Virus record (IMG/VR): IMGVR_UViG_3300042289_000986
Location: 124,001-188,000 of that record
Length of the DNA: 64,000 nucleotides
Strand: one strand, 5' to 3'
Below the pieces are notes generated by a model. It did no database searches, had not been told where the DNA came from, and saw only the letters and a list, made by a program, of their open reading frames with translations. Each line of letters begins with the position of its first letter. The stretch's first letter is position 1. Below, piece by piece: positions 40,283 through 63,921 of the stretch. The position numbers and the translations under genes were made by a program.

Positions 40283-41161
40283 ATGAAAAATTACACCTTT
40301 GCGTGGGAAATTCAAACTTTATTAGAGCAGTTTGTTTCGGCTTTTAATGATGTAATCATTAAAAGATATGATAAAAACAAAAATGCTATCGCTCCAACGA
40401 GCGGTTTTAAAGTTAGATATATTTATGCACCAAAACAAAGGGTAATAAATAGTCTAACAACACCCGCACCGGGTGGAATTACTGCACCTGTCATTGCTGT
40501 TAATATAACAAGTATTTCAAGAGACAATAGTCGCGTGTTTAACAAACATGAAGGGTTTGATGTTGCTTATGTACCCAACGATGGAAGCGGAACATACGTA
40601 AAAAATATACACCAGCCAGTTCCAATTAATATTAGCGTCAATATGACAATATTGACAAAATATCAATCGGATATGGATCAAATTTTAACTAATTTTATTC
40701 CATATTGTGATCCTTATGTTATTATTTCTTGGAAATTACCAGCAGTATCTAAATCGTCTATTCCATATGAAATAAGATCAGAAATTTTATGGAGCGGAAA
40801 TGTTAATTTAAACTATCCAACTGATATATCTCCAACTCAAGCCTTTCGTCTAACAGCAGATACAAGTTTTACAATTAAAGGTTGGCTGTTTAAAAAGATG
40901 GATGAAACTATCAATAAAATTTACACAATACAATCTGATTATTACGATGGAAGGTTATTGGTACAAGATCCTGCAAAATCTCTCATACAAAGTTTTGAAG
41001 ATGTTTTCGGTCCTTGGGAAAATTACCCAGGTACAGAACTTCCACCAGAAGAAATATCTGAACTTCCTCCATTAATTGATGATAATATCTCAAATGCATT
41101 AATAGCATTCGACGGAGCAATATTAGTTGATATTGAAGGGAACATTTTGATAAATATATAA
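40283..41161 (+). CDS. 15: Tail sheath stabiliser/terminator, gp15-like, with C-terminal extension
   Basis: FVSAFNDVIIKR, YAPKQR, SRDNSR, PVPINI, DQILTNFIPY, FTIKGWLF. Confidence 0.85.
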   Translation: MKNYTFAWEIQTLLEQFVSAFNDVIIKRYDKNKNAIAPTSGFKVRYIYAPKQRVINSLTTPAPGGITAPVIAVNITSISRDNSRVFNKHEGFDVAYVPNDGSGTYVKNIHQPVPINISVNMTILTKYQSDMDQILTNFIPYCDPYVIISWKLPAVSKSSIPYEIRSEILWSGNVNLNYPTDISPTQAFRLTADTSFTIKGWLFKKMDETINKIYTIQSDYYDGRLLVQDPAKSLIQSFEDVFGPWENYPGTELPPEEISELPPLIDDNISNALIAFDGAILVDIEGNILINI

Positions 41162-41167
41162 TAATAT

Positions 41168-43057
41168 ATGGCACAAAGGAATTTTACACAATTTAGTCCA
41201 AGAACTTTTCCTTTAACTGGTGATTATGTCGTTGGTTATAAAAATGATGGTTCAGAAGAAATGCGAACAACCCTTCAGAACATTATTGATTTAGTTTATA
41301 ACTCAGAACCAAGAAACTCAAGTGGATTTAGTATTGTTAAAGCCAATTCTTCATTTTGGGCTTATAATGGAACAGATTTAAAACAACTTTCTGGTAATTG
41401 GCAAAGTACATTCAACACAGTATGCTCTTTATCTACTCTTTGGGATGCACAAGCAGAATTTATTGACTTAACTAATTTTGTAAGCTCTAATTCTGCTAAT
41501 TGGGAATATCAAGGAACAGATATTAAAGCCTTAACGGCAAATTGGCAATCAACTTATATCTCAGTTCAAAATAATGGAGGAACCACTTGGGCTTATAATG
41601 GAACAGATGTTAAACAATTAACAGGTAATTGGCAAACAACATATTCAATTGTTAGCAGTAATTCTGCTTTATGGAACTTGGGTGGTTTCGGTTCTGGAGC
41701 AACAGGCGCAACTGGCGCAACAGGTGTCGGAGTAACTGGTGCTACTGGAACACAGGGTCCAATTGGTTCTATCGGACCAACGGGCGCAGCAGGACCATCT
41801 ACTTCATATTATGAATTTAAAGCAGATGTTAATGCAACAAATACACCACCAAATGCTGGTACTATTAGATGGAATAATTTAACACAGTTAAGTGCAACAC
41901 AAATTCATACAAGTCATTTAACTGATACCTTTCTTGATGTTGATATATTTTTAGCCTTACTTAAAGAAAATGATACATTAATTATTCAAGATAGAAATAA
42001 TTCTGCAAATTATCAAAGATGGAGAGTTAATGCAGCACCAATTGTAGCTGATAATAGTTTTATTACATTTCCAGTTACTTTAATAAATTCAACAACAACA
42101 TTTACTAGTAATCAATCTTTAATTTTAGCAGTAGTATCAGCAGGTATAGCTGGACCTACTGGTCCAACTGGACCAACTGGAGCAGGACAAACTGGAGCCA
42201 CAGGACCAACAGGAGCTACTGGTTCAAATTTTAATTATACATCAATTACATTAAATAGAACACTTTCATCGAATGCTGGTTATATTTTTGATACAACAAG
42301 TAGTCCATTAACTGCAACATTACCTTTAAGTCCCGCAATTGGTGATTTTATTAATATAACAGCAACGATTCAACCAGGAAATCTATTAACTATCGATAGA
42401 AATGGTAGTAATATAAATTCTTCTGCTAGTGCTTTAGGTGTTGATATATCAAGTAATTTTTCTTTGGTTTACACAACATCATCTATTGGATGGAGGTTTA
42501 TTCCATATTCAGGATTAACAAACCCAACTATTAAAATTTATAAAGCTGTTTGGAATACTCTTCTTACAAATTTAACTGGTACTAGTAGAATACCATTTAC
42601 AACAACAGTTGTTAATACAGATCCAGAAATATTTGGTGGAATTACGAATCCTGGCATTTTAGGAGCACAATACATTACCATCAAAAAAACTGGTTATTAT
42701 ATGATTAATTCTAACCTTCACTTGTATGATTTACAAAACGGTTTGCAATTAATGGTTTCACTTTGGAAAAATGAACCTTCTACTGGATACGCAACACCAG
42801 TAAAAGTCCAATCAATCGTAGATTTTCAAAGTGGAACAGTTTCACAAGACCAAATTTTATTTGGTAATGCGTTGTTAAACGTAACTCAAGATGATACTAG
42901 AATTTGGTTACAAGTTGAACACAATGGAACAAGTTTAGTTCCACCGATACCTAATGGTGGACCATTCCCATCTCTTAGAGACGTTTTAGTTGATCCTGCT
43001 CCACCAAACCAAACAACTTCAACACCACCAGATATTATCATAACAAAATTAGCATAA
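41168..43057 (+). CDS. Modular fibre protein: Trp/Asn repeat stalk, short collagen segments, gp9/gp10-like domain, C1q/BclA-CTD-like head
   Basis: W.Y.GTD.K.L..NWQ repeats; GATGATG; DTTSSPLTATLP..P..GD...LTIDRNG; TIKKTGYYMI...IIITKLA. Confidence 0.75.
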   Translation: MAQRNFTQFSPRTFPLTGDYVVGYKNDGSEEMRTTLQNIIDLVYNSEPRNSSGFSIVKANSSFWAYNGTDLKQLSGNWQSTFNTVCSLSTLWDAQAEFIDLTNFVSSNSANWEYQGTDIKALTANWQSTYISVQNNGGTTWAYNGTDVKQLTGNWQTTYSIVSSNSALWNLGGFGSGATGATGATGVGVTGATGTQGPIGSIGPTGAAGPSTSYYEFKADVNATNTPPNAGTIRWNNLTQLSATQIHTSHLTDTFLDVDIFLALLKENDTLIIQDRNNSANYQRWRVNAAPIVADNSFITFPVTLINSTTTFTSNQSLILAVVSAGIAGPTGPTGPTGAGQTGATGPTGATGSNFNYTSITLNRTLSSNAGYIFDTTSSPLTATLPLSPAIGDFINITATIQPGNLLTIDRNGSNINSSASALGVDISSNFSLVYTTSSIGWRFIPYSGLTNPTIKIYKAVWNTLLTNLTGTSRIPFTTTVVNTDPEIFGGITNPGILGAQYITIKKTGYYMINSNLHLYDLQNGLQLMVSLWKNEPSTGYATPVKVQSIVDFQSGTVSQDQILFGNALLNVTQDDTRIWLQVEHNGTSLVPPIPNGGPFPSLRDVLVDPAPPNQTTSTPPDIIITKLA

Positions 43058-44170: not shown

Positions 44171-44874
44171 TGAGAGTATTTTCGGGATCTTTAGCAGGAT
44201 CAAACTCTTTAATAGGTGAAGATCGCGCCATTAATTACGGAGGTTCTTTCGCTGGTGCATCTAATTTTGGCTATGGTTTTGATGCTTGGGATTTTACATC
44301 AACAGGTAATGCGGGTGCGTTTATTGGACCTTCGTTTGGTGGTTTAATAGATACAAACGGTTCTTCTTTTGGATTATATGGTAATGGAGCAGGAAGTAAT
44401 TTTATTGATGTAAGAAGAAACCTTCCTGCAAATTTATCGGTAGGATATGCATTATCCGCAGCAATATCTGTCAATTTTAGAAATGGAAATAAAGGATTTA
44501 GTGTTTACCATAATAACACTTGGGATCCCAACCAAGAAGTCTTTAACTTTAATGTAGGATCCAATGATTATATTATTAATGGAGTAGGAACTGGACAGGC
44601 ATATTCTTCAACAATGGTTGCAAAGATTGTTTTGAAAAAAACTAATTTAAATTCTTATAGTTATTCTGTTACATTGGGAACAACGACATATACTGCAAAT
44701 GATATAACACGTAACGGTTATAGTAATATTAGAGGTTTTAAATTTTATATTTCAAATACTGAAGGAGCACCAAATAACGATTTATATTTTAACAGTATAA
44801 AAGTTTATAAAATAGACGAACCTATCAGTACAATACCAACATCAACATTTACAACTTTTGTGTCTTATGAATAA
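44170..44874 (+). CDS. Beta-rich putative adhesin/lectin-like protein
   Basis: TAATG coupling to the upstream gene; Gly/Asn/aromatic-rich, beta-sandwich-like sequence. Confidence 0.6.
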   Translation: MRVFSGSLAGSNSLIGEDRAINYGGSFAGASNFGYGFDAWDFTSTGNAGAFIGPSFGGLIDTNGSSFGLYGNGAGSNFIDVRRNLPANLSVGYALSAAISVNFRNGNKGFSVYHNNTWDPNQEVFNFNVGSNDYIINGVGTGQAYSSTMVAKIVLKKTNLNSYSYSVTLGTTTYTANDITRNGYSNIRGFKFYISNTEGAPNNDLYFNSIKVYKIDEPISTIPTSTFTTFVSYE

Positions 44875-46090
44875 CATTAAAGATATAGAAAAATTAACAC
44901 AAAAGCTTTTAGCAGAAACTCCAGAATATGTTCATTCGGTTGGTTATGGTTTTAAAGAAGTTGATGGAAAATTAACAGACGAATTTTCTATAGTTTTTGG
45001 TGTTACAGAAAAAAAACCATTATCATCTATTCCACAAAATGAAATTTTACCATCAACAATAACAACAGAAGATGGTAGTATTTTTACTACTGATGTTATT
45101 CAAATACCACAAGCTGTTGCATACCCATCTTGCTATGAAATTAGTAATTCAGTTGAACCCGTTTCATTACATAGATCATCTCGAACAACATATATCGGTG
45201 GAACAAGAATATCAATAGATAATCCATTAAATTTAGGAAACAGTGCATTTACAGGAACTATGGGACTTATCTGTAAAGATCTCACCGACAATACTCTTGT
45301 TGCATTAACAAATGCACACGTTGCTGCTTATACAGAAAGAGACGCATCTTTATTGTCTTCAAGTTTTAGCAATAGACAAACAACAGTATACCAAGCTTTC
45401 CCTTGGTCAAATCAATCTACAATGAAATTAAAAAGGTATGTTCCGCTTTTAGCAAGTGGAAACACAATTGATGCAGCAGTTGTAGCCATAACAAATTCAA
45501 GTAGAGTAAACACACTTACATCTTTTAAACAATTAAATTTAAATTATGGAAATCTTGAATTTGCCACTACCTCTGAAATTGATAATTTGGTCATAAATAA
45601 AAATCCAATTTTTAAATCAGGTGCAACAACTGGTCCTGTTGGATGGCCAGGTTCTATACCTTGGGGTTCTGAATCGTGTTCTCTTACTGCTACCCAAGTC
45701 GGAGTTTCTGTAGGTGTTAATTTTAGTGGAAATATTTTAAATTTTACATCATGTTTAACTTATAGAGGAACATTTACTGTTGCTAGTAGTGGTGGAGATT
45801 CGGGTAGTGCTGTTTGTGCATTAATAAACCCCGAAAGTCAATCTTTAAGCGCATGGAAAGTGGTTGGTTTAACTTTTGCTGGTTCAGATTTAGGAGATAA
45901 TAGTCCATCGTATGCATGTCGCATCGATAATATTTGTTCTACTTTACAATTAACAGCATGGGATGGTCAAACCACCGCTTTAACAAATTTGGGAAATGAA
46001 AGAGTTAAATATGTAGAAGGAAAATCATCAGAACCGTTTGTTATAGAAAATGGAAAAAGATATTGGCAGACAGGATTAACCGTTATTTAA
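44867..46090 (+). CDS. Trypsin-like (S1, Nal1-type) serine protease
   Basis: GTMG, LTNAHV (His), IDAAVV (Asp), GGDSGSAV (Ser), VVGLTFAG; N-terminal pro-like domain. Confidence 0.88.
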   Translation: MNNIKDIEKLTQKLLAETPEYVHSVGYGFKEVDGKLTDEFSIVFGVTEKKPLSSIPQNEILPSTITTEDGSIFTTDVIQIPQAVAYPSCYEISNSVEPVSLHRSSRTTYIGGTRISIDNPLNLGNSAFTGTMGLICKDLTDNTLVALTNAHVAAYTERDASLLSSSFSNRQTTVYQAFPWSNQSTMKLKRYVPLLASGNTIDAAVVAITNSSRVNTLTSFKQLNLNYGNLEFATTSEIDNLVINKNPIFKSGATTGPVGWPGSIPWGSESCSLTATQVGVSVGVNFSGNILNFTSCLTYRGTFTVASSGGDSGSAVCALINPESQSLSAWKVVGLTFAGSDLGDNSPSYACRIDNICSTLQLTAWDGQTTALTNLGNERVKYVEGKSSEPFVIENGKRYWQTGLTVI

Positions 46091-50132: not shown

Positions 50133-50160
50133 AGTATATTTTAATATAAATAAAAATCAA
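50133..50160 (-). promoter_or_regulatory. Sigma70-type promoter for the GT9/TPR-GT2 pair
   Basis: TTGATT-16-TATACT, 6 nt before the ATG. Confidence 0.5.
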
Positions 50161-51059
50161 TAAGGACTATTGGATACTCTTGTAATAAGCATATATGGTT
50201 GAGTACCAAAATTATTATTAAATACTGGATACCCTTGATTACCGTTTCCGCCGTTTGCACCGCCATGTAAAACTGTTACCGCATAAAAAGTTTGTGGTGA
50301 TAAAAGTACACTAATAGAACCTCTTTGAGAAGATTCTCCATTTCCTGTTGTATCCGTAAATCCTTGCGCTATATTTCCAATTAAAGTTGCAAGATTTACG
50401 TTTGATGTATTAATAAATTGATTGTTTTGATATAAACGAAGTCTCATAAAATCTGTTGGATCTGTCATATCATACGAAGCATATCTTATTTCAATATTAT
50501 ATAAACCACCTTCAGTAACAGTAAAATTTGTATGTGTTCCAGTGTTGTTTCCAGTTTCTAAAACAGGAGATATATAAAACGTCAGAGGAGTATTAAAAGA
50601 AATTACATTTTCTAAATTATACAACCATCGATTCCATCGAATAACGTTTTCAATTCCATTTGTTGTGTTTGATAATCCATTATTTAAATTTATATCAAAT
50701 CTTAAATAACAAGGATTAACTGAACCAGAAGGACCAGTTGGTCCAGTTGGTCCTATTGGCCCTCCTGATGGACCAGTTGGTCCAGTTGGTCCTATTGGCC
50801 CTCCTGATGGACCAGTTGGACCTGTAACCCCTGTTGGTCCTGTGTTTCCAAAACCTGTAGCTCCAGTTGGTCCCGTTGGTCCAGTTACTCCTGTATTTCC
50901 AGAACCCGTAGCTCCAGTTGGACCAGTTGATCCTGTGTTTCCTGTAGCACCAATTGCACCCAAATTTGGGATATCAGAAGTTTCTATTACATTAATAGAA
51001 CGAACCGTAGCATCTTTGGGTTCTATATGCTTTCCATAAATGTTAAATTCCAATGCCAT
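50157..51059 (-). CDS. BclA-like protein: collagen segment + C1q/TNF-like head
   Basis: GPT/GAT repeats, then [19 protein letters not shown]...PYMLITRV. Confidence 0.78.
50731..50819 (-). repeat. 39-bp tandem repeat, ~2.3 copies
   Basis: ggaccagttggtccagttggtcctattggccctcctgat x2 on the + strand. Confidence 0.88.
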
Positions 51060-51272: not shown

Positions 51273-51968
51273 TTAAGATATTTTTATTACATGAAAATAA
51301 GGTCTGGTTCCATATGAATTTTCAAAAACAGGAAAACCACCAGTTCCAGGAGTAGGTGTAGTAATAACTGCTGTTCCTCCAGTATGGAAAAATGTTGCAA
51401 CTATATAATAAGGAACTGCATTAACATCCAATATAAATGTACCTCTTCTTTGGGCAGCAGCGTTATTAGATGTTCCGACAATGCCATCACCGATTGTATC
51501 AATTAAAGTTCCGCCGACTGTTGTAGTTATTGGCGTTGATTGTTGTCCTCTTAATCTTAATCTTAGTGTTGCTCCAGTTGGATTATTTAAATCATAAGAA
51601 GCATATCTAATATCTATTAAATATCTTCCAGTTTGTTTTAAAATCATGTTATTTAAAGTAGCATCTGCTTCAATGATATTCGTATTTGTTTGAAGTGTTA
51701 CTGCATTCCAATCAACAATATATTCAACACTATTATATGTATTTACTAATCCAGCATTTGATGTTATTTCCATTTCGGCGGCTGGAAATGATACAGCACC
51801 ACTAGACCAACTAGCAGAATTTTGTCTTACGAAAGTTGTTACAGGTAAACCATTAGAAAAATTTATATAATTAATTTTTTTAGTTGTGCCATTATTTACA
51901 ATAGGCAAAACATCAGTATTCGCGGGTTGACTTATTTCTAATAATTGAGATATTTTTTTATCAGCCAT
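51273..51968 (-). CDS. Short fibre protein with C1q/TNF-like head
   Basis: N-terminal MADKKISQL...DVLPIVNNGTTKKI; head (TGRYLIDIRYASYD...PYFHVIKI) is paralogous to 50157..51059. Confidence 0.75.
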   Translation of the reverse strand: MADKKISQLLEISQPANTDVLPIVNNGTTKKINYINFSNGLPVTTFVRQNSASWSSGAVSFPAAEMEITSNAGLVNTYNSVEYIVDWNAVTLQTNTNIIEADATLNNMILKQTGRYLIDIRYASYDLNNPTGATLRLRLRGQQSTPITTTVGGTLIDTIGDGIVGTSNNAAAQRRGTFILDVNAVPYYIVATFFHTGGTAVITTPTPGTGGFPVFENSYGTRPYFHVIKIS

Positions 51969-52007: not shown

Positions 52008-52838
52008 TCAAGGAGGGGGTAATACAGGTGTATCATCTTGCATAAGTCTGTCATTATCTTCAGTTAATATATATCCAAACATATTATCTAATAACAAACC
52101 AAACAATGTAGTTGATACATATTGTTGTGGTTGATTTAAATCAAACAACTCAGTAGAACCAAAAAATGTATTATTAACATTAGTCAGTGTAATTTTTGTT
52201 ATTTTTCCAGTAATTGTTAAAACGTAATTTGATTCTCCAATATTATTAAAATATGTATTTGTTGGAAATTGATGTAAAATATCATCATTTGAACCCCATA
52301 TATTTTCACCACCACTTAAATAAAAAATAATTGTTTTTCCAGTTGTAAAATTAACATAAGAATATACTTCTCCTTGAACGACACTCCGAAAAAACACATT
52401 TCCTTTGGAAGCATCAATAATATATGATCCTCCTGAAGATAAGGAAAAAGAAGTAACTACATTAGAATAAGTCCAAAAAGATGAATTAGTGTTTACTAAA
52501 GAATAAACACTGTTCCAATTAGAACTTAATGCACAAACAGTACTTGTCGAAGATGTCCATTGTGAACTTAAATTCCCAACTAAAGTTAAATCAGCACTAT
52601 TACCACCAGTACCCGTTGATTTTAAAATTAAATCGGTGTTTTGTATACCATTTTTATACCAATATTCAGTTACACCAACACCAACAGCAGAAACACCTAC
52701 CGTTAAACCAATTCTTCTGACATTTGGGTTAATATTATCATTGGCATCATTAATAGAAGACCAAGGACCGTAACGCGAATCTACGTTCGCATATGGATCA
52801 ACTAAATAAATTGGTGCTGATAAGTTAAAAGTACTCAT
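52008..52838 (-). CDS. Fibre segment protein
   Basis: N-terminal D.RYGPW...R.IGLTV...EYW.KNGI...DLI.K domain; short NWNSVYS stalk; C-terminal GYILTEDNDRLM. Confidence 0.75.
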   Translation of the reverse strand: MSTFNLSAPIYLVDPYANVDSRYGPWSSINDANDNINPNVRRIGLTVGVSAVGVGVTEYWYKNGIQNTDLILKSTGTGGNSADLTLVGNLSSQWTSSTSTVCALSSNWNSVYSLVNTNSSFWTYSNVVTSFSLSSGGSYIIDASKGNVFFRSVVQGEVYSYVNFTTGKTIIFYLSGGENIWGSNDDILHQFPTNTYFNNIGESNYVLTITGKITKITLTNVNNTFFGSTELFDLNQPQQYVSTTLFGLLLDNMFGYILTEDNDRLMQDDTPVLPPP

Positions 52839-57471: not shown

Positions 57472-60456
57472 TTAGATAGTTATAATATAAGAAGTTGCCG
57501 ATCCAAACGGAATTAAAGGTGTGAAATAATACACTCTATAATTAGTTGGAAAAAGATTGTTTGCAGCAGATACGCTGACTGTTGTTTGTGTAAATGTAGT
57601 TTTTACATCGCTTTGAAGCGGTGGATAGAAAATTGTAGTTACTGCTTGAAGAGATGCAGGATATGCAAGTATGACTCTGTTTGCTCCTGCTGGAACATTT
57701 ATAGTGAATTGACTTCCATTTTGAGGGTTTAAAAGATTTTGAGTTAAAGCTCTTACTTGTGGTGAAGTTGTTGGTACAAAATTTTGAACATCGGCCCCAA
57801 AAAATGCTCTTCTTCTACCGTTTAAAGTCATGGATGTCGATACACTATTTTCTGGATCTGGAGTTAGATATATATTATTTCTACTATCGTATGGCTGATC
57901 ACCTTGTCCATAATTACAGGTAACATTATAAACGTTTGATCCATCTAAAATAATTGCTTGAGCAGATGTAGTTGTAAATGTAGAATTTGTTGTATTTGTT
58001 GCGGAGCTAAAAGCAACATAACTCGTTGCTGGACCCGTTCTAAAATTCTGAAACGTATTTGGTTCCCATATACTATTAACAGTTTTACCAACAATTTGTC
58101 CGCGAGTATAATTTAATGTTAATTGAACTGATGTTGTTCCTATTTCTACGTTTGTTCCATTACCACCATGATTACTTGTAACTGTTAACGTTCTGTTTGT
58201 AAAAGTTGGATAATAAATTTTTGTTAAAAGTGCTTGAACAAATTGTTGAAAAGTTGTTCCTGCATTAAAAACCTGTGCAGCAGTTATTGCACCCACAGAC
58301 AAATCACTTGTTACGGTAGATGTTAATTTTCCTAAATTTGACCAATCCGAACTTAATCCAGTAGCCAATGAATATATTGAACTCCAACTGGCACTGTTTG
58401 TATTAACTGTTGTATTTAAGCTAATAATATTAGAACTATTATTGTTTACAAAAGTCCTTGCTGCTAAATCCAAACCACTATTTTGATTCAAAGTCGTATA
58501 AGAACTATTCCAATTTGCAGATAAACTAAAAACAGTATTATAAACACTATTATCGGCACTAGTAGTTTGTACAAAATTTTGAACTTCTAATAAGTTTCCA
58601 CTATTTTGATTCCACGTAGTATAAGCACTATCCCAGTTCGCACTAGTATTATTAGTGACAGAATTTACGGCTAAAATATTTGAACTATTACTGTTTACAA
58701 AAGTCCTTGCTGCTAAATCCAAACTACTATTTTGATTCCAAGTAGTATAAACACTGTTCCAATTTGTTGATAATGAACAAACAGTATTATAAACACTATT
58801 GTTAGCACTTGTAGTTTGTACAAAATTTTCAACTGCTTTTAAATTTGAACTAAGATTATTCCAGCTACTATAAACACTATCCCAATTTCCACTTGTGGTG
58901 TTAACTTTAGTGTTAACATTAATAATATTTGAACTGTTTGTGTTTACAAAAGTCCTTGCTGCTAAATCTAAACCACTATTTTGATTCCAAGTAGTAAAAG
59001 AACTATTCCAGTTAGCACTAGTGTTGTTAGTGACAGAATTTACTTGTAATATATTTGAACTGTTTGTGTTTACAAAAGTCCTTGCTGCTAAATCTAAACC
59101 ACTATTTTGATTCCACGTAGTATAAGCACTATCCCAGTTCGCACTTGTTGAGTTTACTTTAGTGTTAACATTAATAATATTTGAACTATTACTGTTTACA
59201 AAACTTCTTGCGGCTAAATCAAATGCACTGTTAGAATTCCAGCTACTATAAACACTATCCCAATTTCCACTCGTTTGAATGACTTTACTATTAACTTGTA
59301 AAGAATTTGAACTATTATTGTTTACAAAACTTCTTGCGGCTAAATTCAAACCACTATTTTGATTCCAAGTAGTATAAACACTGTCCCAGTTCGCACTCGT
59401 TTGATTGACTTTACTATTAACTTGTAAAGAATTTGCGCTGTTATTATTAACAAAAGTTCTTGCGGCTAAATCAAATGCACTATTAGAATTCCAGCTACTA
59501 TAAACACTATTCCAGTTGGCACTAGTATTGTTAGTAAGTGAATTTACTTGTAATATGTTTGAACTATTTGATAAAACAAAACTTACGATTTCATTTTGAT
59601 CTTCTTCGTTTGCACTAGTTTGATTAATATATGAATAAACACTATTCCATAAATTGGAATTTCCACCTAAAGCATAGATGACATTTGTTGAGCTTAAAAT
59701 TGCACTAGTAGAAAGATTACCAATTAAATAACCCCCACTTAGTGGCAAATATCCAGTAACAATATTGACTAAATTACCACCTGCTGCATAAGATGCTGAA
59801 TTTGCTAAAAGATTTGTATAAGCTTGTTGCCAAAACGATGAGTTACTACGAGTTGTACTATAAACAGAATTCCAAATAGCAGCACTGACTGTTGAAAGAT
59901 TAACATAAAATGAAGAACTTTTGGAAATGTTTGTAAATGATTGATTCCAATTTTCATAATTTGAAAGAACTTGTTGTGAAGTAAAAATCCAGTTTGCGGA
60001 GTTGGTTATTACTAAATTTCCAACAGGTCCAAATTTTAAAATTTTATTTGCAGTGTCAACATAAAATGCATCCTGTGCAGCACTAACTAAAGATAAATCA
60101 CTTTGGTTGGCTTTTAATGCCAAAGCTGTAATTTGTGCTAAAGAAAGAGGCTTATTTAAATCACTGGTATTATCAACTTGATCTAAACCAATTTCATCTT
60201 TAGTTATGATTACATGACCAATTTTTCCATTAACACTAAAAACAAAACCACCTTGATTTATGTTTATTGTTTCGTTTATATTTAAATCCGTTGGATTAAT
60301 TGAAACGTTTGGTGAAGAAATAGAACTAACGTTTATTATAGATGTATCAATACCATCATTTACATTTACAGATTGATTGGTTGTATTTGGGTTTGCATTT
60401 ATTACAACCAAATCTGTAGATGATGGATTAACATTTACTATAATTGAATCACTCAT
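57472..60456 (-). CDS. Very long fibre protein with NW(N/D)SVY repeats
   Basis: SVNGKIG.V...IGLDQVDNTSDLNKP fibre motif; YLPLSGG; repeats; shared C-terminal domain. Confidence 0.8.
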   Translation of the reverse strand: MSDSIIVNVNPSSTDLVVINANPNTTNQSVNVNDGIDTSIINVSSISSPNVSINPTDLNINETININQGGFVFSVNGKIGHVIITKDEIGLDQVDNTSDLNKPLSLAQITALALKANQSDLSLVSAAQDAFYVDTANKILKFGPVGNLVITNSANWIFTSQQVLSNYENWNQSFTNISKSSSFYVNLSTVSAAIWNSVYSTTRSNSSFWQQAYTNLLANSASYAAGGNLVNIVTGYLPLSGGYLIGNLSTSAILSSTNVIYALGGNSNLWNSVYSYINQTSANEEDQNEIVSFVLSNSSNILQVNSLTNNTSANWNSVYSSWNSNSAFDLAARTFVNNNSANSLQVNSKVNQTSANWDSVYTTWNQNSGLNLAARSFVNNNSSNSLQVNSKVIQTSGNWDSVYSSWNSNSAFDLAARSFVNSNSSNIINVNTKVNSTSANWDSAYTTWNQNSGLDLAARTFVNTNSSNILQVNSVTNNTSANWNSSFTTWNQNSGLDLAARTFVNTNSSNIINVNTKVNTTSGNWDSVYSSWNNLSSNLKAVENFVQTTSANNSVYNTVCSLSTNWNSVYTTWNQNSSLDLAARTFVNSNSSNILAVNSVTNNTSANWDSAYTTWNQNSGNLLEVQNFVQTTSADNSVYNTVFSLSANWNSSYTTLNQNSGLDLAARTFVNNNSSNIISLNTTVNTNSASWSSIYSLATGLSSDWSNLGKLTSTVTSDLSVGAITAAQVFNAGTTFQQFVQALLTKIYYPTFTNRTLTVTSNHGGNGTNVEIGTTSVQLTLNYTRGQIVGKTVNSIWEPNTFQNFRTGPATSYVAFSSATNTTNSTFTTTSAQAIILDGSNVYNVTCNYGQGDQPYDSRNNIYLTPDPENSVSTSMTLNGRRRAFFGADVQNFVPTTSPQVRALTQNLLNPQNGSQFTINVPAGANRVILAYPASLQAVTTIFYPPLQSDVKTTFTQTTVSVSAANNLFPTNYRVYYFTPLIPFGSATSYIITI
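58380..59660 (-). repeat. Higher-order repeat of three 14-aa subunits (126 bp)
   Basis: SANWDSVYTTWNQNSGLDLAARTFVNTNSSNILQVNSVTNNT-like units; boundaries approximate. Confidence 0.85.
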
Positions 60457-60842
60457 TGTGGAATAGGCGAATGTTCAGGTATTTGTGTCATTACCTCCCA
60501 ATAATTTTGAGGAAGATTTGAAACAATTGGCCAATGACCCATGAGATATGTTTTTACTTCATTGTTTTGTAATTTTAATCGAATACGCCATTTATACAAA
60601 TCAACAGGAATGTTTACCGTGGTGGCTGGAACTGATATTGTTCCATTTAATGGGTTTGTTATTAAAACACCGCTATTTGAAGAATTTAATGAAAAAACAA
60701 CAGGACTGTCAATTGATCTTAAAACTTCCATTTCAACAAATGCATTTGTAAGATTTAATGCAGAGTTGTTTCTTTGAAAAGTTATACTGTTAATACCTTC
60801 CCAAGTATCACCAGTTATGTGTGGCGGAATATCATAAGTCAT
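60453..60842 (-). CDS. BppU-N-like Ig-fold adaptor protein
   Basis: GDTW...ALNLTNA.V.M.V...NGTI.V...YKW.I.L......KTYL.G; TAAGTA at 60854-49. Confidence 0.6.
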   Translation of the reverse strand: MTYDIPPHITGDTWEGINSITFQRNNSALNLTNAFVEMEVLRSIDSPVVFSLNSSNSGVLITNPLNGTISVPATTVNIPVDLYKWRIRLKLQNNEVKTYLMGHWPIVSNLPQNYWEVMTQIPEHSPIPQ

Positions 60843-60876
60843 ATTCTATACTTATGATTTTAAACTGTATATTTGA

Positions 60877-62745
60877 TTAGCTTGCTGTAGGAATTGTAGG
60901 AGTTTCTGATGCTGCCGTTTCTGGTGCTGCTGTTTCTCCTCCACCTTCCGTTCCAGCTTCTGCTTCAGGGGTTTCTGCTGCTTCTCCACCGCCAGTTTCA
61001 CCAAATTCTGGTATTTCGGATGCACTTGTTCCACCACCACCAGAATCAAGTCCACCGCCTTCTGTAGATGCATCTTCTGCTGCTTGAATGTGTTCTCTCC
61101 AATTTGGACCTGTTGTTGCAATTTGTTCCAATTCCCATTTCAATGCTGCATCCTTTCTTAACCATTCCATATTTTCACTTATACGAGAATCATTATATTC
61201 CAGATAATGTCTTTGAGCAAAAGTTTTTGATATAGATTCGTTTTGACACATATCATTGAAAATTTTGAATTTTAATTCAAATTCTTGATTTTTGCGAATA
61301 GCAAAGAAGTTTGATGGTGGATTAAATTCTAAATTAAAGTAAGATTCGTGAAGTTTGTAATCTTTCCACCAGTTTCTTATTTTTAAATGTGTAATAAATG
61401 CGTTTTTAATTCCTTCTGCAAATTGACTTTGTAAACGGACAATAAATTTTGCAAAACGGAGTTCCTCTCTTAAAATTTCTGCACCATCTTTGTAACCTTC
61501 TTCAGGATTTAATCTGGTTAAAGGAACTTTTAAACTTTTATAAAGTTTATTGACAAAATACATCAAGTCTTTAAGCTCTCCAAGGTTTTGTCCACCTTGC
61601 ATTAACTCTACGTCTGATCCTTGTTCTCCAGAACGCTTGGCAAACCAATATGAGTCTAACATTGATTGTGGATCATATATATTTGCTGCTCCCGATTGTC
61701 CCTTATTACTATCGTAAGATTTTTTATTCCAATAAGATTGCATTAACTGGCGCAAATATGCTTCTGCTTTTGCTGGTGGCATATTTCCGACATCAATTTT
61801 GAATTTTAATCTTTCAGGGGCACGAACCATTCTATAAATAACAATAGAGTCTTCAATCAAAGAAAGTTGTTTATATGCTCTTCTTGCGTTTTCAATAAAA
61901 GGAACTCGCATCGTCATATCCTCATTCCATAAACCAGAATTTACATATGTTACTTGGTTTCCTTGAAACGTCACAATTTGTTGTTGTAAAGCATTTGCTG
62001 GAGTTGGTGGTTGGAAGTTGGATTGGCTTAATTGGGCCGCTGGATTTTGTTGTAAACTAATTGGTTTTTGAAAAACAAAATTTTGTACAACGTTGTTTTG
62101 AACATTATCATATACCGGATTTATTAATTCAGAAGGAACACTCAAAACACCAATAATACCAAGTTCTTTTTTTGCTTCATGGATAATATTTTCAAAAAAT
62201 ACTTCTCCTTCTACTAATAATTGACGACAATATCCCCAACCTTTATTTTCAAAATCAAAAACATTTACGAACTTGTAAAATTCTTTTTCGAGTTCGCTTC
62301 TTTCTTTATTTTCTAATTTAGAAAAACTAGAAAATTGAATTTTTATAACTTTTCCATTTTCATCTTTATTGACAAATTCATCACAAATTTCATCTAAACA
62401 ATCGCCAACTTCAGCATAAGCTGCCATTCTTCTATATTCAGCCAATCTTCTTGTCTTATCAGTATCTACTTGGGCATAAATGTATTTGTGATAAGCTTGA
62501 TCTGAAACAAAACTATTTGGACTATATGAGTCACCAACATCCTTCATATAAGGACCTGTGATGACAGATTGTTGCATCAACCTTAGTTCTTTTCTTTTAG
62601 AAAGACGGTCAAATAATTCATATCTTGGATTATTAACGTCAGCTTCTATTGTTTGTTGAACATAAGGAAGTTTTGATAAAATTGAAGAAACAAAACTTCT
62701 ACCAGTATCTGGTTGACGGTTACTTGTTTGGAAAAAATCTGCCAT
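60877..62745 (-). CDS. 20: Portal protein, gp20-like
   Basis: EYRRMA, QLSLIEDSIVIYRMVRAPER, IDVGNMP..KAEAYL, SMLDSYWF, GGQNLGE, LYKSLKVP..RL, REELRFAKF. Confidence 0.97.
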   Translation of the reverse strand: MADFFQTSNRQPDTGRSFVSSILSKLPYVQQTIEADVNNPRYELFDRLSKRKELRLMQQSVITGPYMKDVGDSYSPNSFVSDQAYHKYIYAQVDTDKTRRLAEYRRMAAYAEVGDCLDEICDEFVNKDENGKVIKIQFSSFSKLENKERSELEKEFYKFVNVFDFENKGWGYCRQLLVEGEVFFENIIHEAKKELGIIGVLSVPSELINPVYDNVQNNVVQNFVFQKPISLQQNPAAQLSQSNFQPPTPANALQQQIVTFQGNQVTYVNSGLWNEDMTMRVPFIENARRAYKQLSLIEDSIVIYRMVRAPERLKFKIDVGNMPPAKAEAYLRQLMQSYWNKKSYDSNKGQSGAANIYDPQSMLDSYWFAKRSGEQGSDVELMQGGQNLGELKDLMYFVNKLYKSLKVPLTRLNPEEGYKDGAEILREELRFAKFIVRLQSQFAEGIKNAFITHLKIRNWWKDYKLHESYFNLEFNPPSNFFAIRKNQEFELKFKIFNDMCQNESISKTFAQRHYLEYNDSRISENMEWLRKDAALKWELEQIATTGPNWREHIQAAEDASTEGGGLDSGGGGTSASEIPEFGETGGGEAAETPEAEAGTEGGGETAAPETAASETPTIPTAS

Positions 62746-62821
62746 GATTATATTATATTTAGTCTGACTTATAAGTAATCAATGTTTTTTGTTTATTAAA
62801 GAATAAGTATTCAAAATTAGC

Positions 62822-63367
62822 ATGGCAAACACTTATATTCACACATTACCAGATGTTTTAGCAACTGATCCTAATGCATATACTATTTTAGATTATGAAA
62901 ATCAATTTGAAGAATATGTAACAGCAAAAGTTACTCTTGCATCTTTAGCTAATTTTACAAACAATACATTTTTAAATAGTACACCATATTTAAATAGTCT
63001 TTCTGCTACAACATACGTAGAAAACAATAGCGCAAACATTCAAGGAATTTCAAATGTCGTAAATTCGTTTAGTTCAAACAGTATTAATGTTAATACTTTT
63101 GTTAATAGTAATAGTTCAAATATACAATCTGTTTATACTCATTATAATTCACAAAGTGCTAATTTTGCGACTAGAAACTATGTCAATGGCGGGTTTTTAC
63201 CGCTGTCTGGTGGAGATGTTATTGGTGAATTGTTTGCTACACAATATGGAGTAGGAAACACAGTAATTGTCGATGGAACGTTGGGTACGGTTGTTAGAAA
63301 AATGCAAATATTTGATATAAATGGCGCTTCTATAGGATTTATCCCAATTTATAATTCTATAACTTAA
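62822..63367 (+). CDS. Short fibre-like protein
   Basis: NSANIQ/NSSNIQSVY repeats, FLPLSGG; TAAGTA at 62804-09. Confidence 0.7.
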   Translation: MANTYIHTLPDVLATDPNAYTILDYENQFEEYVTAKVTLASLANFTNNTFLNSTPYLNSLSATTYVENNSANIQGISNVVNSFSSNSINVNTFVNSNSSNIQSVYTHYNSQSANFATRNYVNGGFLPLSGGDVIGELFATQYGVGNTVIVDGTLGTVVRKMQIFDINGASIGFIPIYNSIT

Positions 63368-63921
63368 ACCAAATAAGAAATTGTTATTTGTTGGTTTGTA
63401 TCTGAAGTTAAAATAAATTTATTATCAGAAGCAACTAAAACAAATTCAACCATAAAATCCAACGGATCAATAACTTGGACACCGGAAACACATGGAAGCT
63501 GTATATCTACTGCTCCAACAAATGAACTAACAAACGGGACACGACTATCTCTACTAAGTTTACCATATCCTGCTTCGTTTTCTATAATAATATCAAAAAA
63601 ACCATCTCTCTTTGGGGTTTGCGGTATTGTAAATGCTAGATATTTTTCTTTATAAATATAAAAAGGAACTTTAATTCCTTCAAACGGTAAATTTGATGCA
63701 GATAAGTTTTTAACAGCAGAAAAAGGATTCCAAATAGTTGTTCCTTCAAACATAACTTCATTATCAGGAACTAAATACACTGCTCTTATATCAAAAAAAT
63801 TATTACCTTTAACTAAAATGTTAAAATTTTGAACAGATGTCAAAAGCGGGTTAGTAACTACAAATTTATAAGGCTTAACATCGGTAATTTTTGGTTTTCC
63901 GTGAATAAAAAAGCGATCCAT
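63364..63921 (-). CDS. IPT/TIG-like Ig-domain structural protein
   Basis: PKITDVKP, ILVKGNNF, FTIP, DIIIENEAGY; TAAGTA at 63936-31. Confidence 0.6.
   Translation of the reverse strand: MDRFFIHGKPKITDVKPYKFVVTNPLLTSVQNFNILVKGNNFFDIRAVYLVPDNEVMFEGTTIWNPFSAVKNLSASNLPFEGIKVPFYIYKEKYLAFTIPQTPKRDGFFDIIIENEAGYGKLSRDSRVPFVSSFVGAVDIQLPCVSGVQVIDPLDFMVEFVLVASDNKFILTSDTNQQITISYLV

What the first reader, a model, noticed from the sequence alone, without database searches (positions are those of the whole stretch)
41095..41290. Second connector type: C-terminal 'L..xDG.IL...G' hook with an N-terminal 'KISQL-like' partner, seen three times
Seen: gp15 has a non-T4 C-terminal tail ending ALIAFDGAILVDIEGNILINI, and the next gene begins MAQRNFTQF..P..GDYVVGY. 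The 52008 protein ends LLLDNMFGYILTEDNDRLM, and its next gene begins MADKKISQL..P..TDVLPIV. The 63364 protein ends LVASDNKFILTSDTNQQI and abuts (convergently) a gene beginning MANTYIHTLP...AYTILDY. Inference: a reusable peptide hook that attaches fibres to structural hubs; here it would hang a collagen/C1q fibre on the tail terminator (neck whiskers).
Basis: partly seen in the sequence, partly recalled or inferred. Interest (0 to 1): 0.62.

Follow-up and report, generated by a model that had tools for sequence, protein, structure and literature searches.

The report
Portable fibre hook on tail terminator

Summary
The quoted sequences are all present. The window belongs to a 211.6 kb, 32% GC, uncultured T4-like phage. 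The gp15 tail (window 41093-41158) is real and recurrent. It is a roughly 22-residue C-terminal hook with the pattern h-h-x-h-x-G/D-x-x repeated 2.5 times. It sits on a Pro/Glu linker beyond the conserved gp15 core.

In related metagenomic phages the same hook ends about 14 different carrier proteins: gp15 with two linker types, Ig-like neck proteins, fibres, and small 54-140 aa proteins. The next gene then starts with a roughly 44-residue head, MAxxNFTxF..GD[YF][IVL]VGYKxDG.

- Among distinct gp15 genes, 6-7 have both hook and head, 55 have neither, and none is discordant.
- Tails upstream of such heads resemble each other far more than background tails do (z = 7.5).
- A hook HMM trained elsewhere picks out gp15 alone among 286 genes of this genome.

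The fibre has collagen-like Gly-X-Y runs and a TNF/C1q-fold tip.

The 52008 and 63364 tails do not match the hook profile (hhalign probability 1.4% or less). Relatives of the 52008 protein that lack its tail still precede the KISQL gene. Binding is inferred and not shown; the co-fold gave no answer. Verdict: partly supported, a new variant of phage fibre attachment.

The parts
40283..40954 (+). gp15 tail terminator / tail sheath stabiliser core (residues 1-224)
   Evidence: Pfam PF16724 T4-gp15_tss, E 1.6e-19, residues 10-224; PHROG 227; 1231 homologues found.
40955..41011 (+). Conserved C-terminal segment of this gp15 clade (residues 225-243, ..KSLIQSFEDVFG). It is the likely counterpart of the sheath-binding C-terminal strand of other terminators.
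   Evidence: The segment 'SLIxxFExxFG' is kept in many relatives that end there, at 238-250 aa. The T4 and XM1 C-terminal segments bind the sheath (PMC12929629). The assignment here is an inference.
41012..41092 (+). Pro/Glu-rich linker (residues 244-270, PWENYPGTELPPEEISELPPLIDDNIS)
   Evidence: Its length and sequence vary among the closest relatives (A3). In another gp15 lineage it is replaced by a long TPTPT linker (L058, L098).
41093..41158 (+). C-terminal hook (residues 271-292, NALIAFDGAILVDIEGNILINI): 2.5 octads of h-h-x-h-x-G/D-x-x
   Evidence: A hook HMM trained on other phages scores it 11.7 bits, top of 286 genes. The same module ends about 14 other carriers upstream of head genes.
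41159..41167 (+). TAA TAA TAT spacer. The fibre ATG is in the same frame as gp15.
   Evidence: Read directly from the alignment.
41168..41299 (+). N-terminal head module of the fibre (residues 1-44, MAQRNFTQFSPRTFPLTGDYVVGYKNDGSEEMRTTLQNIIDLVY)
   Evidence: A4 alignment. There are 267 clusters in 1.84e9 representative proteins, and the module is N-terminal in 148 of the 150 listed. No Pfam match and no PDB match by sequence.
41300..42487 (+). Fibre shaft: NSxxW-type repeats and two collagen-like Gly-X-Y runs (residues about 177-211 and 324-353)
   Evidence: PHROG tail-fibre / collagen-like hits on residues 177-352; Gly-X-Y runs seen in the translation. The Pfam Collagen model did not reach E 0.01 for this protein.
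42488..43054 (+). C-terminal TNF/C1q-like jelly-roll domain of the fibre (residues 441-629)
   Evidence: AF2 model, pLDDT 74.3, pTM 0.74. Foldseek against PDB: TL1A, TNF and F-BclA C-terminal domain, E 4e-6, TM up to 0.74.
52008..52838 (-). 276-aa fibre-like protein. Its tail (nt 52011-52130, ..LLLDNMFGYILTEDNDRLMQDDTPVLPPP) is a different tail type.
   Evidence: The tail is conserved in close relatives (A10). It is not hit by the hook HMM. hhalign against the hooks gives probability 0.5%. The L009 homologue carries a true hook after this segment.
51273..51968 (-). 231-aa protein with a KISQL-type head (nt 51846-51968) and a TNF/C1q-like C-terminal domain
   Evidence: jackhmmer group; A8 alignment. 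hhalign of A8 against the INFTQF heads: probability 48%, E 2e-4, full length and in register. Aligned with the fibre tip in A7.
63364..63921 (-). 185-aa Ig-like neck protein, homologous to the C-terminal domain of long gp15 variants. Its tail is at nt 63367-63471.
   Evidence: A6 alignment, 37-52% identity to separate and gp15-fused copies. AF2 model pLDDT 72.8, with the tail below 50. Foldseek hits are weak and all Ig-like / IPT.
62822..63367 (+). 181-aa fibre with a TYIHTLP-type head, convergent with the Ig-like gene and overlapping it by 4 nt
   Evidence: The same arrangement with 558- and 592-aa versions occurs in L114 and L010.

Best explanation
The tail terminator gp15 of this uncultured T4-like phage carries two additions beyond its conserved core and conserved C-terminal segment. 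These are a flexible Pro/Glu linker and a 22-residue hook of 2.5 octads, h-h-x-h-x-G/D-x-x, predicted to form beta strands.

The gene 6 nt downstream encodes a trimeric-type fibre with collagen-like Gly-X-Y runs and a TNF/C1q-fold tip. Its first 44 or so residues form a conserved head module.

I propose that hook and head dock on each other. [quoted passage not shown]

What is shown: hook and head are a co-inherited, portable pair that has been moved between many carrier proteins. What is inferred: that they bind, the geometry and stoichiometry of binding, and the location on the virion.

The two other tails in the window are different tail types. At best they are separate connector pairs, and the 52008 tail is probably not one.
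For: - All 6-7 distinct gp15 genes with a hook are followed by a head gene. None of the 55 distinct gp15 genes without a hook is. The hook-bearing genes fall into two gp15 lineages with unrelated linkers (short Pro/Glu, long TPTPT).
- Searches that started from the head found hooks at the C-terminus of the upstream gene on about 14 distinct carriers (viral contigs, metagenome contigs, the 1.84e9-protein library). The carriers are gp15 x2, Ig-like neck proteins (L101, L147), a 355-aa fibre (L093), and proteins of 54-140, 245-314, 270, 423/1308, 550 and 915 aa. About 7-9 distinct heads have no hook in the adjacent gene.
- Permutation test: tails upstream of INFTQF-type heads are more alike than tails drawn from this genome's own genes, z = 7.5, 0 of 1000.
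- Train/test split: the HMM built from 8 viral-contig hooks scores new carriers at 7.9-19.1 bits (L125, L128, L135, L147, L149). The best background tail scores 5.8 bits.
- Among 1855 predicted proteins, every HMM hit of 7 bits or more lies in a protein just upstream of a head gene, with one exception. That exception is two genes upstream of a head (L105).
- Hook similarity tracks head similarity across 16 pairs: Mantel r = 0.43, 0 of 5000 permutations.
- The hook follows the conserved clade C-terminus 'SLIxxFExxFG', so it is an add-on and not the terminator's own C-terminal strand.
- The Ig-like protein's tail is low-confidence in isolation. That fits tails that fold on binding, but the model is of a different tail type.
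Against: - There is no direct evidence of binding. The only complex prediction (3 heads + 3 tails) scored 0.00 and counts as no answer.
- About a third of distinct head genes lack a recognisable hook in the adjacent upstream gene (L087, L102, L105, L148, L131, L136). The rule is therefore not absolute, or the partner is encoded elsewhere.
- Co-inheritance alone would also result from any cassette that moves as one DNA piece.
- A hexameric gp15 does not match a trimeric fibre in symmetry, and this mismatch is unresolved.
- All sequences come from uncultured phages; no virion data exist.
Confidence: 0.6

Rival explanations
1. The gp15 tail is simply this clade's version of the sheath-binding C-terminal domain of tail terminators. 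In T4, gp15 residues 209-272 form a shared beta sheet with gp18. On this reading the tail has nothing to do with the fibre.
For: T4 gp15 and other myophage terminators use C-terminal beta strands to augment the sheath C-terminal domain (PMC12929629). The hook is predicted to be strand-like and sits at the C-terminus of gp15.
Against: 55 distinct gp15 genes of the same clade lack the hook yet must still cap a sheath. The hook follows a conserved C-terminal segment and a variable linker. The same hook ends non-gp15 carriers such as fibres, Ig-like proteins and small proteins.
Confidence: 0.08
2. The hook is a transient assembly aid and not a stable anchor. On this reading it acts as a template or chaperone-like strand that nucleates trimerisation of the downstream fibre's N-terminus.
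For: This fits the same adjacency and co-inheritance data. Phage fibres often need dedicated assembly factors encoded next to them (general knowledge). Small 54-140 aa carriers exist that could be pure helpers.
Against: Placing the hook on structural hubs (the gp15 ring, the Ig-like neck protein, the ends of other fibres) via flexible linkers is what a tether would need, not what a chaperone would need. Known fibre chaperones are usually encoded downstream and are separate proteins. Nothing here tests whether binding is stable or transient.
Confidence: 0.17
3. The peptide is incidental. On this reading the conserved feature is DNA at the gene junction: a recombination joint for swapping fibre cassettes, or a translational coupling signal. 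It would merely happen to be translated as the end of whatever gene lies upstream.
For: The last codons of gp15, the spacer and the first codons of the fibre are nearly invariant at DNA level among the closest relatives. The pair clearly moves as a cassette.
Against: Across distant carriers the heads are only 23-60% identical, and the hooks keep a residue pattern rather than a sequence. That points to selection on the peptide. Spacers between hook and head vary from 3 to 49 nt and in frame. PT-linker gp15 proteins carry 2-3 tandem hook units, which a junction signal would not need.
Confidence: 0.08
4. The resemblance among the three window tails (gp15, 52008, 63364) is a chance product of a low-GC, Ile/Leu/Asn/Asp-rich proteome and post hoc selection.
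For: The HMM does not hit the 52008 and 63364 tails. hhalign probabilities are 1.4% or less. Tails upstream of KISQL-type heads are no more alike than random tails, z = -0.35. L118 and L119 keep the KISQL gene without the tail.
Against: All three share a loose period-8 alternation of hydrophobic pairs and acidic/Gly turns. The L009 homologue of the 52008 protein continues from the same segment into a true hook. Ig-like proteins show tail types that track the head type of the next gene.
Confidence: 0.6

Closest known systems
T4 fibritin (Wac) collar and whiskers on neck protein gp13
   Same: Trimeric fibres decorate the head-tail junction of a T4-type virion. They are attached through the fibre's N-terminal domain (PMC12929629).
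   Different: In T4 the anchor is domain III of gp13 and the fibre is a coiled coil. Here the proposed anchor is a short C-terminal peptide on a linker of the tail terminator gp15. The fibre is collagen-like with a TNF/C1q-fold tip. No wac-like gene was seen in the window.
Neck fibres of Anabaena myophage A-1(L) (gp82-gp81-gp80 chain on neck protein gp5)
   Same: Neck fibres are hooked on by an N-terminal domain. Successive trimers are joined head to tail through N-terminal beta hairpins, and their genes lie in one operon (PMC10966104).
   Different: The hub differs (pentadecameric neck protein versus hexameric tail terminator). There is no sequence relation, and A-1(L) has no portable C-terminal peptide on the hub.
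T4 gp15 C-terminal domain / XM1 terminator C-terminal strand binding the sheath
   Same: A C-terminal beta-strand element of the tail terminator is used for beta-sheet augmentation of a partner (PMC12929629).
   Different: In those phages the partner is the sheath and the element is part of every terminator. Here the hook is an optional add-on, present only when a head-bearing fibre gene follows, and it also occurs on non-terminator proteins.
BclA-type collagen-like filaments with a TNF/C1q-like C-terminal domain (for example the Bacillus F-ENA tip fibrillum F-BclA)
   Same: The fibre architecture matches: collagen-like Gly-X-Y region plus a TNF/C1q jelly-roll tip. Foldseek hit 9h38, E 4e-6.
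   Different: BclA-type filaments are bacterial spore and endospore-appendage proteins with other N-terminal anchoring motifs. The similarity concerns only the fibre body and tip, not the connector.

Membership tests
T4 gp15 tail terminator / sheath stabiliser (PF16724) | Sequence match to the family profile above the curated cut-off | tested here: met
   70.5 bits against a cut-off of 25, E 1.6e-19, residues 10-224; PHROG 227.
T4 gp15 tail terminator / sheath stabiliser (PF16724) | Genomic context with other T4-type neck, head and tail genes | tested here: met
   A Portal_T4-type portal lies at 60877-62745, about 30% identical to cyanophage portals. Relatives' loci carry Portal_T4, Phage_T4_gp13 and the prohead protease next to gp15. 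The sheath and tube genes of the whole genome are assigned only by size and position in an ORF list, with no family scan.
Hook module (defined here) | Match to an HMM built from hooks of other phages, at the extreme C-terminus | tested here: met
   gp15 tail: 11.7 bits, iE 0.004, ends at the last residue, top of 286 genes.
Hook module (defined here) | The 52008 and 63364 tails belong to the same motif | tested here: not met
   No HMM hit. hhalign probability 0.5% and 0.1% against the hooks; 1.4% between the two tails.
Hook module (defined here) | The next gene begins with the INFTQF..GD[YF]xVGYK head | tested here: met
   Window 41168; 7/7 versus 0/55 among gp15 genes; about 14 other carriers.
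Hook module (defined here) | Physical binding of hook to head | tested here: inconclusive
   Complex prediction gave no answer, score 0.00. Experiments are needed.
Collagen-like fibre with TNF/C1q-type tip | Gly-X-Y repeats | tested here: met
   Gly-X-Y runs at residues about 177-211 and 324-353 in the translation. PHROG collagen-like and tail-fibre hits. The Pfam Collagen model did not reach E 0.01 for this protein but does for its neighbours 43067 and 46456.
Collagen-like fibre with TNF/C1q-type tip | C-terminal TNF/C1q jelly-roll fold | tested here: met
   AF2 model pTM 0.74. 302 PDB matches at E 0.001 or better; the listed ones are mostly TNF-family ligands (several are chains of their complexes with receptors or antibodies) plus F-BclA, best E 4e-6. 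No Pfam C1q hit by sequence.
T4 fibritin whisker system | Wac-type coiled-coil fibre bound to gp13 domain III | not tested
   No wac-like protein appeared among the family scans of the fibre genes. gp13 domain III was not examined.

The most novel reading that the evidence does not exclude
These phages may use a small, combinatorial plug-and-socket code. Several distinct C-terminal tail types would each pair with their own N-terminal head type:
- hook with INFTQF..GDYxVGYK heads;
- Trp-rich WIDDYxW tails with ILNNRESL heads;
- TEDG-like tails with KISQL or TYIHTLP heads.

Fibres could then be daisy-chained and re-plugged by recombination onto different hubs: the gp15 ring, the Ig-like neck protein, or the ends of other fibres. 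That would give modular host-range hardware that can be read from sequence alone.
Probability: 0.3. Interest if true: 0.75.

Novelty: new variant of a known kind. Interest (0 to 1): 0.55.

Why it matters
If hook and head bind, two things follow.

- It gives a sequence-readable rule for which fibre sits on which structural hub in a large, uncultured group of aquatic T4-like phages. It also identifies the tail terminator as a fibre anchor, a role not reported for T4 gp15 in the paper read here.
- Short portable connectors would explain how fibre cassettes move between attachment points. They could also serve as simple handles for attaching foreign fibres or cargo to phage particles in laboratory strains.

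The head module has no Pfam family and no solved relative. It occurs in 267 protein clusters.

Tried and rejected
- Complex prediction with 3 copies of the head (residues 1-60, alignment A4) and 3 copies of the gp15 tail (residues 243-292, alignment A3): score 0.00, controls not run, verdict 'no answer'. It is not used as evidence either way.
- megablast of the region against cultured phages: no match.
- Pfam at E up to 10 on heads and tails: nothing.
- PDB by sequence for the head profile and the KISQL protein: only chance-level hits.
- ESM Atlas for the head: only unannotated clusters. Mtd_N and T4_gp9_10_N appear only as sub-threshold leads.
- Single-protein scans of viral contigs for the 51273 and 62822 proteins found nothing, or only near-identical copies.
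- The first permutation test used a background drawn from all fetched loci and gave z = 1.2. That background is full of homologous tails from 80 related phages, so I repeated the test with this genome's own genes as background.
- The 8 short training hooks were copied from the output.
- A stop-codon read-through fusion of gp15 and the fibre (same frame) was considered and dropped. There are two consecutive TAA codons, and the spacers in other pairs are not multiples of three.
- Read laying and the look-up of sequencing runs were not used. No alternative genetic code was used.
Full report
**Context.** The window is bases 124001-188000 of a single 211,587-bp contig with 32% GC. It encodes a T4-type structural module. 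Its gp15 and portal are only about 28-31% identical to those of cultured cyanomyophages, and megablast finds no cultured relative. Close relatives are metagenomic contigs of 140-226 kb. The host is unknown.

**Observation.**
- gp15 (40283-41161, +, 292 aa) matches Pfam T4-gp15_tss on residues 10-224. It ends ...NALIAFDGAILVDIEGNILINI.
- Six bases later, in the same frame after TAA TAA TAT, a 629-aa ORF begins MAQRNFTQFSPRTFPLTGDYVVGYKNDGSEE.
- The 52008-52838 (-) protein really ends ...YILTEDNDRLMQDDTPVLPPP.
- The 63364-63921 (-) protein really ends ...FILTSDTNQQITISYLV.

**The gp15 tail is an optional add-on.** Among 120 listed homologues the first 220 or so residues are 60-87% identical, but the C-termini differ widely.
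- Many proteins stop at 229-260 aa, often right after a conserved 'SLIxxFExxFG' segment.
- About 390-aa forms are fused to an extra domain.
- Only the closest relatives (P0002-P0007) keep a linker plus '..ENALIAxDGxILVxIDxxILINI'.
- In T4 the C-terminal domain of gp15 (residues 209-272) forms a shared beta sheet with the sheath, and other terminators use a short C-terminal strand for the same purpose (PMC12929629). In this clade that role most plausibly falls to the conserved segment. The linker and hook lie beyond it.

**Co-occurrence around gp15.** I examined eighty IMG/VR loci around gp15 relatives.
- Every distinct gp15 gene with a hook (6-7) is followed by a gene that starts with the same head.
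- None of the 55 distinct gp15 genes without a hook is followed by such a gene.
- The hook-bearing genes belong to two lineages with unrelated linkers. One has a short Pro/Glu linker. The other has a long TPTPT linker with one to three tandem hook units (L058, L096, L098).

**Starting from the head instead.** I used an alignment of heads to scan several collections: viral contigs, metagenome contigs and the 1.84-billion-protein library, with four look-ups by protein.
- In about 14 distinct cases the upstream same-strand gene ends in a hook.
  - The carriers include a 355-aa fibre (L093), Ig-like neck proteins (L101, L147), and proteins of 54-140 aa (L099, L125, L128, L135).
  - They also include proteins of 245-314 aa (L106, L144), 270 aa (L103), 423/1308 aa (L110/111), 550 aa (L109) and 915 aa (L149).
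- About 7-9 distinct heads have no recognisable hook in the adjacent gene (L087, L102, L105, L131, L136, L148; L090 has no upstream gene on its strand). In L105 a hook sits two genes upstream.

**Statistics.**
- Tails upstream of INFTQF-type heads are much more alike than random sets of tails from this genome: z = 7.5, 0 of 1000. A first test against all fetched loci gave z = 1.2, because that background is full of homologous tails.
- A hook HMM built from eight viral-contig hooks scores gp15 at 11.7 bits in this genome; the next best of 286 genes scores 3.0 bits.
- The same HMM scores carriers it never saw at 7.9-19.1 bits, against 5.8 bits for the best background tail.
- In 1855 predicted proteins, all hits of 7 bits or more lie upstream of head genes.
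- Hook similarity tracks head similarity: Mantel r = 0.43, 0 of 5000 permutations.

**The head.** It is a roughly 44-residue module. It sits at residue 1 in 148 of the 150 listed library hits, on bodies of 52 to over 1000 aa. It occurs in 267 clusters at E 0.001 or better. It has no Pfam family, no solved relative by sequence and only unannotated Atlas neighbours. It is almost absent from 185,579 prokaryote genomes.

**The fibre.** It has NSxxW-type repeats and two Gly-X-Y runs. Its C-terminal domain folds as a TNF/C1q jelly roll: AF2 pTM 0.74, Foldseek matches to TL1A, TNF and F-BclA at E 4e-6.

**The other two tails.**
- Neither is hit by the hook HMM, and profile-profile comparison does not join the three families.
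- *The 52008 tail.* It is conserved in close relatives. It is homologous to the segment that precedes a true hook in the L009 homologue, which is followed there by an INFTQF-type fibre. However, relatives whose C-terminus is a different domain are still followed by the KISQL gene (L118, L119). Tails upstream of KISQL-type heads show no mutual similarity, z = -0.35. This pair is not supported.
- *The 63364 protein.* It is the detached counterpart of the extra domain fused to long gp15 variants (A6, 37-52% identity). The model is a weakly supported Ig-like beta sandwich with a low-confidence tail.
- Across relatives this neck protein carries different tails that go with different neighbouring genes.
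  - Hook goes with an INFTQF head (L101, L147).
  - 'FVTEQGLEFITENNIFFISEG' goes with a KFSQLP head (L061).
  - Trp-rich tails go with 'ILNNRESL' heads (L054, L057, L076, L083).
  - 'FILTSD..ISYLV' and its L010 counterpart go with a convergent TYIH[TS]LP fibre.
  - No tail goes with the portal or gp13 gene.
  This suggests that several connector types exist, but each rests on only a few lineages.
- KISQL and INFTQF heads align in register over their full length with modest support: hhalign probability 48%, E 2e-4.

**Mechanism.**
- Shown: hook and head are a portable, co-inherited pair. The hook is tethered by variable linkers to hubs that are, or are likely to be, virion parts.
- Inferred: the hook docks on the fibre's N-terminal module, so that gp15 carries collagen-like neck fibres.
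- Open: the stoichiometry (six hooks against trimeric fibres) and the fold of the joint.
- The octad periodicity recalls beta-helical phage proteins, but that rests on my memory only.
- The single co-folding job gave no answer and is not evidence.

**Comparison with known systems.** Neck fibres are known in T4 (fibritin on gp13) and in A-1(L) (gp82 on gp5, with head-to-tail chaining). Terminators are known to use C-terminal strands for the sheath. Two things appear new in the sources I could search: a short transplantable C-terminal peptide paired with a dedicated N-terminal fibre module, and its use on the tail terminator.

**Verdict.** This is a new variant of a known kind of system. Interest 0.55.

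Noticed in passing
window 60453-63921, compared with L003:6001-11795: In relatives the order is gp15-Ig fusion, portal, 126-aa gene, fibre, all on one strand. In the window the Ig-like gene, portal, 129-aa gene and fibres are inverted and lie about 22 kb from gp15, with fibre and glycosyltransferase-like genes in between. gp15 seems to have been split from its extra domain by a rearrangement.
   Followed up: partly
L054, L057, L076, L083 (genes after gp15): Ig-like neck proteins ending in Trp-rich tails (..LWIDDYxWxE) are followed by genes starting MA(R/Q)xILNNRESL..IRxKINSNF. Those proteins in turn end in a hook and are followed by an INFTQF-type head. This looks like a three-step chain of tail/head joints.
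   Followed up: partly
window 41156-41170: The gp15 stop and the fibre start are in one reading frame (ATA TAA TAA TAT ATG). In L007 a single stop separates them. Spacers in other hook/head pairs are not in frame, so read-through is unlikely.
   Followed up: partly
L098:2262-3989 (575-aa gp15), L096, L095: gp15 proteins with long TPTPT linkers carry two or three tandem hook units of about 22-30 residues. Three hooks on one chain could match the three heads of one trimeric fibre. The copy number varies, so this is only a hint.
   Followed up: no
window 51273-51968 (-) and 50157-51059 (-): Both proteins share the TNF/C1q-like C-terminal domain of the 41168 fibre (19-23% identity in A7). The window thus holds at least three fibres with this tip, two of them collagen-like.
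   Followed up: partly
window 44858-46090 (+): This 410-aa protein in the fibre cluster contains a ...SSGGDSGSAV... stretch reminiscent of the chymotrypsin-type serine protease active-site motif. Pfam finds nothing. A related gene follows the INFTQF fibre in L058.
   Followed up: no
G000:C1:22204-23431 (-), outside the window: A 106-aa ORF ending ..FNLETILANLDTGDAEILL is followed by a 296-aa gene starting MAGVRIPELIELSTVESNDQFVVV (KISQL-type head). The tail is not hit by the hook HMM.
   Followed up: partly
G000:C1:109892-110617 (+), outside the window: The 241-aa gene after the putative tail tube gene ends ..YGILDEETGTLMSLP, another TEDG-like ending. The next gene has no recognisable head.
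   Followed up: no
G000:C1:208693-211587 and 45-1106: The contig ends repeat (..AAASSDWNTSFNRST..). A long fibre gene with a KLITQLP-type head runs off one end and continues at the other. This is consistent with a circularly permuted or terminally redundant assembly.
   Followed up: no
L104:2302-3915: A 537-aa protein between a hook-less gp15 and a head-bearing 1374-aa gene begins with a hook-like peptide (MILEAIDGSILIALDDAILLDVG) at its N-terminus. This was seen by eye; it is not among the HMM hits of 7 bits or more listed.
   Followed up: no
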